Translations under genes and position numbers: made by a program | Assembly (NCBI RefSeq): GCF_963853765.1 | Contig: NC_088859.1 | Coordinates: forward strand, 10,912,001 to 10,976,000 | Reading direction: 5' to 3' | DNA length: 64,000 nucleotides | Origin: Magallana gigas | Taxonomy: Eukaryota | In this document: one piece after another, positions 16,391 through 19,300 of the stretch | How the letters are laid out: the number at the start of each line of letters is the position of its first letter | How positions within the stretch are numbered: the stretch's first letter is position 1 | Notes under the pieces: model-generated | What the model was told of the DNA's origin: nothing | Database searches by the model: none | The model's input: the letters and a program-made list of their open reading frames with translations, nothing else

Positions 16391-19300
16391 TCATTCCACT
16401 GTCACACTTTTCGCGAGATTCCTAGGACAGTCAACCTGTAGCAAAAAGTTTTAGACATGAAAACTTTAAAATTCATTCATTTGAAATAGTAAAAATTTCA
16501 ATCTAAATGCTTTTTTATACTATCATTGTCATATAATTTACAATATTCTTTATTCTAAACTAGCAAATGATAGAACTATTTTTTATGACTCCTGCAATGA
16601 AGTAATTTAAAATAATTGATGTCTAAATCTGAATCATCTCCTCCTTTTTTTTTACTATAGGTGTATTTTTTAGAAGTGTTTATAAAGAAAAAAAAAATCA
16701 ATGTTATAAAGAATTAAGTTATTCTAGAGAAAGTTTCTAATGCTAATTATGGTATTATAAAGACCAATCATGGTGGTTTTGCTCAAATGTTCTATAAAAG
16801 TGCTAGTGCTAGATCATGAGATGAGATTATAATAATTTATCAACACATTCACAATGTATTTAATCCTTAAAAAAGGGTCTCAACATATATTTTAGATAAA
16901 GGAAATTTTTAAGAAAAACCAGGTTGTAAAAAAAACCTTGGAAAATACTGTACGTGTCATTTCTCTTATATAAATTTACTTTTATTAAAATGCCAGTATA
17001 TTTTACTAACTTTATTAAGTAACATGTATTAGTTATCTTTTTATGTAATATTTTATGATGATTCAGAAGAAAAAAAACACTAAACCAGAAAAAATAATAA
17101 TCCTAAAGCATTGAGGATTAGAAGATTGTTTTTTTGGAATTTTTGTTATTAGATGATAGGTATAAAAAGTATGCTTTGGAAATATTGCTGTTAGACCTTA
17201 ATATCATATTTTAATAAAACACTTCAAAACAAATAATTTAATCAAACAATTAAGACAAAATTCACATGAGTGTTAAGCACTGGTCAATTATTAAAAAAAG
17301 AGGTTATAATGAATGTGGAGCAAATCTCGGACATGTTTTTATATTTCGCAATAGCACTAAGCAAAAAACAAAGAGGTAAGGGACTAAATTACTGTCAATA
17401 TGAGCTAGCTGACATAAACTATAATATTTATATTGTAATTTTCTTACAAATATATGTACATTTATAATGAGTACATGGGTTTAAGTGTATTGAAATGTGT
17501 AATGGCAGATTGCGTAACATATGACGCTTAATCTCATCATTTAACATTTAATTATTTCAACATCAACCACCTGGCATCCCATCACCAACTTTAACCATTG
17601 AAGCAAATATATATCTATGGCTTAATACTCCATAACTAGCTCTCTGATTTAAGACCTCCACCCCAATCCTGTTTATTTCATAGGAGTAGCCATTTTACAT
17701 CCAAGTTCTGCCTAATGAAGGGTACTCATACTGTAACCTTGATGACCAAAAGGTGGAGGTGTGTTGGGTGTGCAGTGTGTGATAAACACCGTGGAAGGAG
17801 CAAGATTGTAAGAAACAAATTAAATAGCATCTAATGAAAGAAAATAAAATGAAAGAGGAAATTATGTTTCTACAGTAATCCCATCACTCAAAGTTGGCAT
17901 TATTACGATGAAAATAATGATGAAAATACAGATTTGCAAAGTTTCATCATTTAAAATAAAAAAGGACTCCAAACTATCTTTACCTCCCATTATAATTGAC
18001 TGAAATTCTAAATGGCAATACTAAAAACACTGAAACCAATTGAAAAAGAAACACAAGAACTAGAAACACATGCAATGTTTCTTACGTCATATCCTCGCAA
18101 TACTGCGATATGGAAAGAGAGCAGCTGCATAGGGATTACTGTGAGGACACCTTGGAGGCAATCTACAGTCTGGGGCACCTCCACATAATTATATGCATAC
18201 TTTTGAGTTTCGGTGTCTCCCTTGGTACATAGTAAAACTGGCCGCCCCTAAAAGGATACCATTGGACGATCTTGTTAGAGGTTTTCTACAGTAAGCATGC
18301 ACGTCCCCCATTTGGTTGCCCAGCCAGACAAGCACTACACACAGGACAGAACTTGCTCCATCAGACACACTCAGCACATTGGAAAACAACCATGGGAAAT
18401 TTATAATAATAAATTTAACTATAAAACTCAAATTTTTCCTTTGTTTAATTAGGTATTTGGTTTGGTTTCCATTGGTAGCAAGAGTATATTGCAAAATGGA
18501 GGAAATTTTGTCACAAAGAGACTTATGAAACATAGGACAGATTATAGGTACAACATACAAAAAGCTATAAGCATGCAGAGAAGAAAGGCACTCCGGTTAA
18601 TCTATCTACAATAACATATAGTTGGTCGTTGGTTCAAACCAATCTTACATCACATCCTCTTAATTGTGCGATATGCATGGACAGTAACTGCATAGGTATT
18701 ATGGTGAGGATGCCCTGTAAGCAGTCGATAGTGGAAGGCACGCCAATATACTTATTGACTTGCTGTTGCGTTTCCTTATCATCGTTATTGCCCAATACTA
18801 TTGGGTTACCCTACAATGAATAATTATGGTTGTCATGACAACATGCATATTAGACTTAAGGTACACAAGAGTTGGTGTGGTAAACACTGGGTACTTCTTT
18901 GTGGAAACAGGAAATTTCTGAAGAAGTACACATACCTGAAAATAAAGAGCTTTACTACTTGACCATTTTCACCAAATGTAAACTGGTATTTAGAATTTTA
19001 CTAAAATTAATCTTTGTACTTTTAAGAAAGAAAAAACCAATATAAATTGTCAAATTCAGTTGAGATGATTTATAATTTTTGGATTGATTGATTTGATGAT
19101 ACATAATTTGATACTCTGTGAATTGAAGTTGCATGGGCTTCTACATCTGTCTATGTTAATCAGCTGGTGGGCTATGTTGCCCCTAGTTGAGTATGAGCGT
19201 ACTGAGTATGCAGTTAGATTGCTCCAATACACTGACAGCTAGTCAATGAACTACAGGTACATACGGAGGCAAGGGGAAAGATAGGAACTATCATTCAAAC

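What the first reader, a model, noticed from the sequence alone, without database searches (positions are those of the whole stretch)
18086..18810. Tandem duplicated, putatively mutually exclusive exons in the GFAT isomerase domain
Two paralogous 162-nt, phase 0-0 exons sit between exon 17 and the last exon. Both have consensus splice sites and no stops, and they have diverged heavily while keeping the core (DCLQG.LT.IPMQLLS.HIA.LRG.D), which argues that both are under selection. Variant B resembles human GFPT1 (GRPV..RGYD). Variant A is divergent ([15 protein letters not shown]) and sits just before the C-terminal catalytic loop ([10 protein letters not shown]). GFAT is the rate-limiting step to UDP-GlcNAc, the precursor of chitin and glycans, so tissue-switchable isoforms (for example mantle/shell chitin versus housekeeping) are plausible. 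I am not aware of a description of this exon pair, but have not searched the literature.
Basis: partly seen in the sequence, partly recalled or inferred. Interest (0 to 1): 0.85.

Follow-up and report, generated by a model that had tools for sequence, protein, structure and literature searches.

The report
Oyster GFAT mutually exclusive exon pair
The Pacific oyster's single gene for GFAT, the rate-limiting enzyme of amino-sugar (chitin and glycan precursor) synthesis, carries two old tandem copies of its second-to-last coding exon that RNA reads show are used one at a time; the pair is real and shared by molluscs, annelids and brachiopods, but it is an ordinary kind of splicing and public annotation already lists the isoforms.

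Summary
Confirmed. Two 162-nt, phase 0-0, AG/GT-flanked open exons lie on the minus strand at 18810-18649 (A) and 18247-18086 (B), 59% identical in protein.

- **Usage:** A takes about 93% of junction reads and B about 7%. No A>B or skip-both junction reached the listing threshold of 3 reads.
- **Species and copy number:** The window is Magallana (Crassostrea) gigas, and GFAT is single-copy in this genome.
- **Conservation:** The same A-then-B arrangement occurs in four other genomic loci and in RefSeq isoforms of Crassostrea virginica, Haliotis, Pomacea and Lingula. Ab initio gene models of Ridgeia, Pinctada and Elysia carry A and B in tandem. dN/dS is 0.03-0.07 for both exons.
- **What differs:** Three positions never share a residue between the classes (human F658, V662, Y666). 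They sit in or just after the helix that ends at Asp667, next to the catalytic C-loop. UDP-GlcNAc contact residues lie elsewhere.
- **Second module:** Skipping the 61-nt stop-bearing exon gives a conserved alternative C-loop, VDHPRGLLKTYTF.
- **Regulation:** UGCAUG motifs flank both exons at conserved places.

No paper describing this was found, but RefSeq already models the isoforms. The functional difference, the tissue pattern and the exclusion mechanism are untested.

The parts
19905..19943 (-). Constitutive upstream exon ([13 protein letters not shown]). Its donor at 19905 joins either exon A or exon B.
   Evidence: Sequence. Joints 19905>18810 and 19905>18247.
18649..18810 (-). Exon A, 162 nt: [54 protein letters not shown]. 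This is the major variant, the lophotrochozoan 'A type'.
   Evidence: Junction reads in runs X21/X22/X23: upstream exon>A 31/86/11 and A>next exon 42/90/22. Contig depth in X8 is about 590-670. dN/dS is 0.07 against locus L004.
18086..18247 (-). Exon B, 162 nt: [54 protein letters not shown]. This is the minor variant, like vertebrate and cnidarian GFAT.
   Evidence: Junction reads in X21/X22/X23: upstream exon>B 1/7/0 and B>next exon 3/7/2. An X8 contig has depth 61. dN/dS is 0.03. The sequence is identical to M. gigas XP_019928276.1 and XP_034311736.1.
16375..16435 (-). 61-nt exon L1 carrying the canonical C-loop [14 protein letters not shown] and the stop codon (TGA at 16393-16391). A donor follows 16 nt after the stop.
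   Evidence: Sequence. Loose ends at 16373 in 53/108/16 reads continue into the exon that starts at 15646.
15605..15646 (-). Start of exon L2. It is 3'UTR when L1 is included. When L1 is skipped it encodes the alternative C-loop VDHPRGLLKTYTF followed by a stop. The exon's 3' end was not determined.
   Evidence: Reads joining exon A directly to it: 8 in X22 and 3 in X23 (table 7). The same tail is in M. gigas X4, C. angulata X3 and C. virginica X8/X9. Related tails are in Pomacea, Octopus, Lingula, locus L001 and metatranscriptome proteins.
18842..18847 (-). UGCAUG 32-37 nt upstream of exon A, inside a 23-nt block (TGCATGTTGTCATGACAACCAT) identical in L004.
18572..18577 (-). UGCAUG 72-77 nt downstream of exon A, conserved in L004 at +55. 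L001 has UGCAUG at +135 and L002 has GCAUG at +138.
18296..18301 (-). UGCAUG 49-54 nt upstream of exon B, conserved in L004.
18069..18074 (-). UGCAUG 12-17 nt downstream of exon B, conserved in L004 at +15. L001 has one at +49 and L002 has two, at +31 and +45.

Best explanation
This is a genuine, ancient pair of mutually exclusive exons in the single-copy GFAT gene (glutamine:fructose-6-phosphate amidotransferase) of the Pacific oyster.

Shown:
- The spliceosome joins the upstream exon to either A or B and then to the next exon, so each mRNA carries one 54-residue version of the last strand-helix-strand-helix unit of the isomerase domain.
- A is the default form, at about 93% of junction reads.
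- Both copies are kept by purifying selection.
- The A-then-B pair predates the split of molluscs, annelids and brachiopods.

Inferred, about 0.35:
- The two versions differ without overlap at three positions, equivalent to human F658, V662 and Y666. B has F, V, Y. A has M/L, E/Q/T, C/L/F.
- These lie in or just after the long helix that ends at the Asp (human D667) that salt-bridges Arg33 of the glutaminase R-loop and leads into the catalytic C-loop.
- The exon choice therefore most likely tunes coupling between the two active sites or C-loop closure, giving kinetic or regulatory isozymes. It is unlikely to act on sugar binding or on the UDP-GlcNAc pocket.

A second, combinable module swaps the C-loop itself. 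Skipping the 61-nt stop-bearing exon yields VDHPRGLLKTYTF, which keeps the residues equivalent to Lys676 and Thr679.

Conserved UGCAUG motifs beside both exons suggest control by an Rbfox-type factor (inferred, about 0.4). How double inclusion is prevented is not known.
For: - **Sequence and splice sites:**
- **RNA junctions:** 282 reads for A and 20 for B over three polyA runs (tally), plus contigs of a fourth run. No A>B or skip-both joint is listed.
- **Single locus:**
- **Same arrangement elsewhere:** A then B, each 162 nt and open, in L001, L002/L003 and L004.
- **Selection:** dN/dS is 0.07 and 0.03 (window against L004) and 0.07 and 0.04 (L001 against L002).
- **Named isoforms:** A or B in C. 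virginica, Pomacea, Haliotis and Lingula; B only in the M. gigas and C. angulata entries retrieved; A only in Octopus. Tandem A+B appears in Ridgeia, Pinctada and Elysia gene models.
- **Tree:** molluscan A clade 99/91 and lophotrochozoan B clade 94/90.
- **Class-diagnostic columns:**
- **Structure:** the helix spans residues 668-689 of the model with pLDDT about 80-90. The exon aligns to construct residues 620-673 of human GFAT-1 chains, which is native 614-667.
- **Roles of D667, the C-loop, K676 and T679, and the UDP-GlcNAc contacts:** PMC7000685.
- **UGCAUG:** four motifs within 77 nt of the exon ends, against 0.16 expected.
- **Rbfox precedent:** the positional rule and Rbfox control of human GFPT1 exon 9 are in PMC10514471.
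Against: - No functional data exist for either isoform.
- The tissues and stages of the RNA runs are unknown, so regulated switching is not shown.
- Joints with fewer than 3 reads are not listed, so rare double inclusion or double skipping cannot be excluded.
- The AU test on 54 columns does not formally reject species-wise grouping of A with B (p 0.17 and 0.067).
- Three-dimensional contacts of the diagnostic residues were not computed.
- UGCAUG motifs occur on both sides of both exons, which does not by itself predict a direction of regulation.
Confidence: 0.85

Rival explanations
1. Exon A is effectively constitutive. Exon B is a relic whose roughly 7% use is splicing noise without function.
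For: B is a small minority in all four runs. The oyster A exon is the more diverged copy, which could mean it took over the function.
Against: B has the lower dN/dS (0.03 and 0.04). It is intact, with consensus splice sites, in every genome examined, from bivalves to a brachiopod and an annelid. B reads join the upstream exon directly rather than exon A, so its inclusion is coupled to A skipping. UGCAUG motifs flank it at conserved places.
Confidence: 0.08
2. The isoforms do not differ in catalysis. They differ in assembly or stability, for example homo- versus hetero-oligomer formation, turnover or a partner protein, because the swapped helix lies on a subunit or partner interface.
For: GFAT dimerises through its isomerase domains (PMC7000685). 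The diagnostic changes replace an aromatic and hydrophobic set (F, V, Y) by M/L, E/Q, C/L, as expected for an interface.
Against: No contact analysis was possible with these tools. The neighbouring Asp667 and C-loop point to interdomain coupling instead.
Confidence: 0.25
3. The pair is an assembly artefact or a recent local duplication private to this assembly.
For: None beyond the tandem arrangement itself.
Against: 20 of the 24 listed runs, from 13 studies, hold at least half of the stretch's sampled words. RNA reads use both exons. The copies are only 64% identical in DNA with synonymous sites saturated. Other species carry the same pair.
Confidence: 0.01

Closest known systems
Human GFPT1 exon 9 (muscle isoform GFPT1-L)
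   Same: It is regulated alternative splicing of a GFAT gene that yields isozymes. Its inclusion is driven by an intronic UGCAUG bound by Rbfox1/2 (PMC10514471).
   Different: It is a 54-nt cassette exon specific to mammals, not a duplicated exon pair. The oyster event replaces 54 residues of the isomerase domain just before the C-loop and dates from before the mollusc-annelid-brachiopod split.
GFAT gene paralogues (vertebrate GFPT1/GFPT2, Drosophila Gfat1/Gfat2)
   Same: They provide two versions of the rate-limiting hexosamine-pathway enzyme with partly complementary expression (PMC8834284).
   Different: That diversity comes from whole-gene duplication. The oyster has one locus and varies only the last 54 or 14 residues by splicing.
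coq-2 exons 6a/6e (mutually exclusive exons in nematodes, flatworms, molluscs and annelids)
   Same: It is a same-length tandem exon pair in a metabolic enzyme. One copy resembles the pan-eukaryotic sequence and the other carries a few invariant lineage-specific changes. It is present in molluscs and annelids (PMC7434440).
   Different: For coq-2 the biochemical consequence (rhodoquinone versus ubiquinone synthesis) is shown experimentally. For GFAT no functional difference is known.
Other mutually exclusive exon pairs noted in this genome by the scan (ANKRD10, glycogen synthase)
   Same: They are old tandem exon pairs in the Pacific oyster that are used one at a time. For glycogen synthase, public annotation already lists both isoforms.
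   Different: They are different genes. Here a second combinable module (the alternative C-loop exon) lies directly downstream.

Membership tests
GFAT / GlmS (glutamine:fructose-6-phosphate amidotransferase) | N-terminal class II glutaminase domain plus two SIS isomerase subdomains. | tested here: met
   tblastn of full-length GFATs tiles the window's minus strand from about 31768 to 18086. M. gigas XP_019928276.1, which contains the window's exon B and alternative tail, carries precomputed PF01380, PF13522, PF13537 and PF13230.
GFAT / GlmS (glutamine:fructose-6-phosphate amidotransferase) | C-terminal catalytic loop [11 protein letters not shown] with the Lys and Thr equivalent to human K676 and T679. 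| tested here: met
   Exon L1 encodes [14 protein letters not shown]. The roles of K676 and T679 are from PMC7000685.
Mutually exclusive exons from tandem exon duplication | Adjacent exons of equal length and phase that are homologous to each other. | tested here: met
   Both are 162 nt and phase 0-0, with 59% protein identity and 401 nt between them.
Mutually exclusive exons from tandem exon duplication | Mature transcripts contain exactly one of the two. | tested here: met
   Joints upstream exon>A, A>L1, upstream exon>B and B>L1 are all present. No A>B or upstream exon>L1 joint is listed in four runs at a threshold of 3 reads.
Mutually exclusive exons from tandem exon duplication | Both copies are maintained by selection across species. 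| tested here: met
   dN/dS is 0.03-0.07. The pair is present in other bivalves, gastropods, Lingula and Ridgeia.
Exclusion by steric hindrance (intron too short) | The donor of the first exon and the branch point of the second are closer than about 50-60 nt. | tested here: not met
   The intron between A and B is 401 nt here, 396 nt in L004, 727 nt in L001 and 676 nt in L002.
Exclusion by U2/U12 splice-site incompatibility | One of the competing introns has U12-type consensus sites. | tested here: not met
   All sites are GTAAG...AG of U2 type.
Exclusion enforced by nonsense-mediated decay | Double inclusion or double skipping shifts the reading frame. | tested here: not met
   162 is divisible by 3, so both aberrant forms would stay in frame.
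Exclusion by competing RNA pairing (docking and selector sites) | Conserved intronic complementary elements, one docking site pairing with one selector per variant. | tested here: inconclusive
   Inverted-repeat search, duplex scans of conserved intronic blocks in the window and L004, and folding gave only AT-rich chance matches, with z-scores between -0.9 and +0.8. Only one close relative was available for comparison.
Rbfox-regulated alternative exon | (U)GCAUG within about 100 nt of the exon, conserved in position. | tested here: met
   Four UGCAUG lie 12-77 nt from the ends of A and B, all at matching places in L004. Downstream motifs are also present in L001 and L002. 0.16 are expected in 300 nt, P about 3e-5.
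Rbfox-regulated alternative exon | Exon choice responds to the Rbfox protein. | not testable with these tools
   This needs a knockdown or a minigene experiment.

The most novel reading that the evidence does not exclude
Across Lophotrochozoa a single-copy GFAT gene encodes up to four isozymes (more in Lingula, which has three variants of the exon). It does so by combining an ancient exon swap that changes the helix residues next to the Asp667/Arg33 interdomain switch with an ancient alternative catalytic C-loop (xDxPRxLLKx[Y/H][T/S]). On this reading the isozymes differ in coupling of the glutaminase and isomerase sites, or in feedback behaviour, and are deployed by Rbfox-type splicing control. 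That would be the functional counterpart of the GFPT1/GFPT2 gene duplication of vertebrates, and a natural set of C-loop variants for the enzymology of ammonia channelling.
Probability: 0.3. Interest if true: 0.6.

Novelty: new member of a known kind. Interest (0 to 1): 0.4.

Why it matters
GFAT sets the flux into UDP-GlcNAc, the precursor of chitin, N- and O-glycans and O-GlcNAc. Vertebrates and flies diversify the enzyme with two genes. The oyster, and apparently most lophotrochozoans, keep one gene and diversify it by splicing at exactly the element that couples the two active sites.

The natural variants are three class-specific substitutions beside Asp667 and a conserved alternative C-loop that keeps the Lys676 and Thr679 equivalents. 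They are ready-made probes of the interdomain communication proposed from the human GFAT-1 structures.

For molluscan biology they offer a testable route to tissue- or stage-specific control of chitin and glycan precursor supply.

The finding is modest in novelty. Mutually exclusive exon pairs are a well-known kind, several others exist in this same genome, and RefSeq already models these isoforms. What seems undescribed is the pair's age, its selective maintenance, its structural position and the linked alternative C-loop.

Tried and rejected
- **RNA pairing as the exclusion mechanism.** I tried an inverted-repeat search (one search was a strand-format error), RNAduplex scans of six conserved intronic blocks in the window and L004 and folding of the regions upstream of A and B. 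No partner was conserved between the two species and no fold was better than shuffles. This is left inconclusive.
- **AU tests** that A and B of one species form a clade. The likelihood drops by 25-27 units, but p is 0.17 and 0.067, so this is not formally rejected with 54 columns.
- **Origin of the A-like residues** (LSLHIAE/N...) in a tunicate (Clavelina), hagfish and lamprey. The tree backbone is unresolved, so shared ancestry versus convergence cannot be decided.
- **Taxonomic identity of L001 and L002/L003.** A search for the accession strings in papers found nothing. They remain unnamed lophotrochozoan-like genomes.
- **Contig look-ups.** P0001 gave no record and P0012 gave no DNA.
- **Literature.** Five searches for a description of GFAT mutually exclusive exons or mollusc GFAT splicing found none.
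- **An 8-read variant junction in run X22** joins exon A to GTTGATTGTCCTCGAGG... (VDCPRGLLK). This sequence is absent from the assembly at up to 2 mismatches. It is probably an allele of exon L2 but is unexplained.

Full report
**Observation.** The gene lies on the minus strand.
- Exon A (18810..18649) and exon B (18247..18086) are each 162 nt with no stop. Each is preceded by AG and followed by GTAAGA.
- The upstream exon (19943..19905, [13 protein letters not shown]) ends on a complete codon. The next exon starts at 16435 with [14 protein letters not shown] and a stop. Either exon therefore fits in phase 0-0.
- The two peptides are 59% identical (64% in DNA), with synonymous sites saturated.
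- A six-frame search of the whole 564-Mb assembly finds only these two copies. The most conserved GFAT exon occurs only once, so the gene is single-copy.

**Expression.** I laid three polyA RNA-seq runs (raw reads) and the contigs of a fourth RNA run on 16300-20100. The table gives junction reads for runs X21/X22/X23.

| Junction | Reads |
|---|---|
| Upstream exon>A | 31/86/11 |
| A>next exon | 42/90/22 |
| Upstream exon>B | 1/7/0 |
| B>next exon | 3/7/2 |

- The contig run has spliced contigs for A (depth about 590-670) and for upstream exon>B (depth 61).
- In total there are 282 A reads and 20 B reads, so B is 6.6%.
- No A>B junction and no junction skipping both exons is listed in any run. 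The listing threshold is 3 reads.
- B-containing reads join the upstream exon directly, so B inclusion is coupled to A skipping. This is mutual exclusion, not independent cassette behaviour.
- The divergent exon A is the default form in these samples. Their tissues are not known to me.

**Identity of the organism and existing annotation.**
- The window's upstream exon, exon B and the alternative tail described below are identical to Magallana (Crassostrea) gigas XP_019928276.1 (isoform X4). XP_034311736.1 (X9) has B with the canonical tail.
- RefSeq models of C. virginica contain all four combinations: X5 is A+canonical, X8 is A+alternative tail, X6/X13 are B+canonical and X9 is B+alternative tail. 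Pomacea canaliculata does the same with X1, X3, X2 and X4.
- Haliotis asinina has X6 (A) and X7 (B).
- Lingula anatina has three versions of the exon (X3 is A-type, X2/X8 are B-type, X1 is a third type).
- Octopus has the A type with either tail.
- Ab initio models of Ridgeia piscesae, Pinctada imbricata and Elysia wrongly include A and B in tandem. That at least shows the genomic order A then B.
- So the isoforms are already in public annotation. Five full-text searches found no paper that describes them.

**Conservation.**
- A phmmer search with exon A against 1.8 billion representatives returned many genomic fragments in two classes.
- Four fetched loci all carry an A-type exon followed 400-730 nt later by a B-type exon, each exactly 162 nt, open and AG/GT-flanked. 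The loci are L004, a close relative, and L001 and L002/L003, which are distant unnamed lophotrochozoan-like genomes.
- Nei-Gojobori dN/dS is 0.07 (A) and 0.03 (B) between the window and L004, and 0.07 and 0.04 between L001 and L002.
- In a maximum-likelihood tree of the 54 columns, the oyster A exon groups with octopus and gastropod A exons (99/91). The oyster B exon groups with Haliotis, Ridgeia, Lingula, L001 and L002 B exons (94/90).
- The AU test does not formally reject species-wise grouping (p 0.17 and 0.067). With 54 columns this is weak either way.
- The conserved order, length and diagnostic residues favour one duplication before the mollusc-annelid-brachiopod split.
- A-like residues also occur in the single exon of a tunicate and of cyclostomes. 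Whether that is shared ancestry or convergence is unresolved.

**What the exon encodes.**
- The exon aligns without gaps to construct residues 620-673 of human GFAT-1 chains, which is native 614-667.
- In an AlphaFold model of the C. virginica A isoform it forms strand, short helix, strand and a long helix (residues 668-689), with pLDDT about 80-90, followed by RGCD.
- Across 13 A-type and 14 B-type exons, three columns never share a residue between the classes. At human F658, A has M/L and B has F (Y in one of 14). At V662, A has E/Q/T and B has V. At Y666, A has C/L/F and B has Y.
- R615 (N/E/D/Q against R), V641 and V650 (mostly I against V) and G665 (K/N/G against G) nearly separate the classes.
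- Positions 658 and 662 are one helical turn apart. Position 666 follows just after the helix end and is next to the invariant Asp667.
- According to PMC7000685:
  - Asp667 forms a salt bridge with Arg33 of the glutaminase R-loop in the glutamate-free state.
  - Asp667 lies next to the catalytic C-loop (670-681), which contains Lys676 and Thr679.
  - The UDP-GlcNAc contacts (Arg343, Gly355, Thr447, Thr458, Gly461, His463, Gln310) are all outside the exon.
- I therefore infer that the swap tunes interdomain coupling or C-loop behaviour, or an interface, rather than the feedback pocket itself. This is an inference from sequence position. No contacts were computed and no enzyme data exist.

**A second, linked module.**
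- Reads show that the 61-nt exon with the canonical tail and stop codon (16435-16375) is itself spliced, 16 nt after the stop, to an exon starting at 15646. There are 53/108/16 loose-end reads with a perfect consensus.
- That downstream exon begins with a paralogue of the tail, VDHPRGLLKTYTF followed by a stop.
- A minority of reads (8 in X22, 3 in X23) join exon A directly to it, skipping the 61-nt exon.
- The same tail is identical in M. gigas, C. angulata and C. virginica isoforms. Related tails occur in Pomacea and Octopus (TDQPRHLLK[T/S]YTH), locus L001 (VDQPRSLLKVHS...), metatranscriptome proteins (VDQPRGLLKIYS..., VDQPRSLLKVYS...) and Lingula (IEHPGGLLEVHTS, where the Lys is replaced by Glu).
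- Apart from Lingula, the Lys676 equivalent and a Thr/Ser at the 679 position are kept.
- This is an old alternative catalytic C-loop that can combine with either A or B.

**Regulation and exclusion.**
- Steric hindrance, U12 incompatibility and frame-shift/NMD enforcement do not apply. The intron is 401 nt, all sites are U2-type and 162 is divisible by 3.
- Searches for competing RNA pairing found nothing convincing.
- UGCAUG stands out. It occurs 32-37 nt upstream and 72-77 nt downstream of A, and 49-54 nt upstream and 12-17 nt downstream of B.
- All four motifs are at matching positions in L004. Downstream motifs are also present in L001 and L002. 0.16 are expected in 300 nt, P about 3e-5.
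- (U)GCAUG is the Rbfox site. Human GFPT1 exon 9 is itself Rbfox1/2-dependent (PMC10514471).
- An Rbfox-type input is a reasonable, untested hypothesis. It does not by itself explain exclusivity.

**Verdict.** The event is a new, well-supported member of a well-known kind: a mutually exclusive exon pair from tandem duplication. It is already captured by automated annotation, and other such pairs have been noted in this genome by the scan. Its interest lies in its age, its position beside the interdomain switch of a rate-limiting enzyme, the linked alternative C-loop, and the single-copy status of the gene.

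Noticed in passing
window 15605-15646 (-) and 16375-16435 (-): There is an alternative terminal coding exon. The stop-bearing 61-nt exon is spliced on to an exon that starts with a paralogous tail, VDHPRGLLKTYTF. Some reads skip the 61-nt exon, which gives an alternative catalytic C-loop. The tail is conserved in oysters, Pomacea, Octopus, Lingula, L001 and metatranscriptome proteins.
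   Followed up: partly
L002:5436-5561 and L002:6685-6810 (also L003:300-425 and 1549-1674): This unnamed species also has two tandem copies of the exon [21 protein letters not shown][T/P]LALVD..., which may be a second mutually exclusive pair. The oyster window and genome have one copy only (20615-20490).
   Followed up: no
proteins P0232, P0228, P0185, P0229 (Lingula anatina RefSeq isoforms): Lingula has three versions of the 54-residue exon (A-type, B-type and a third type ending SYHIATLRNLD). Its alternative tail has Glu in place of the catalytic Lys.
   Followed up: no
window 17443-17950 (-), conserved block 17786-17860: RNA depth is raised (up to about 14 in run X22) and there is a block conserved with L004 inside the intron between B and the next exon. 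The frame reading ...[11 protein letters not shown] resembles the third tail TVFTQHLDL... of several C. virginica isoforms. L004 has a CAG acceptor where M. gigas has CAA, and no junction reads were listed here.
   Followed up: partly
window 18647 junction reads of run X22: Eight reads join exon A to GTTGATTGTCCTCGAGGTTTATTGAAG (VDCPRGLLK). This differs at 3 bases from the assembly's downstream exon and is absent from the whole assembly. It is probably an allele, but the 108 reads that join the 61-nt exon to the downstream exon in the same run show only the reference version.
   Followed up: partly
window 18826-18848 (-): A 23-nt block TGCATGTTGTCATGACAACCAT just upstream of exon A is identical in L004 although the surrounding intron has diverged. 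It contains UGCAUG and the palindrome GTTGTCATGACAAC. Folding gave no significant structure.
   Followed up: partly
proteins P0176 (Ridgeia), P0257 (Pinctada), P0258/P0259 (Elysia): Deposited ab initio gene models include both alternative exons in tandem, duplicating 54 residues. These are annotation errors caused by the exon pair.
   Followed up: no
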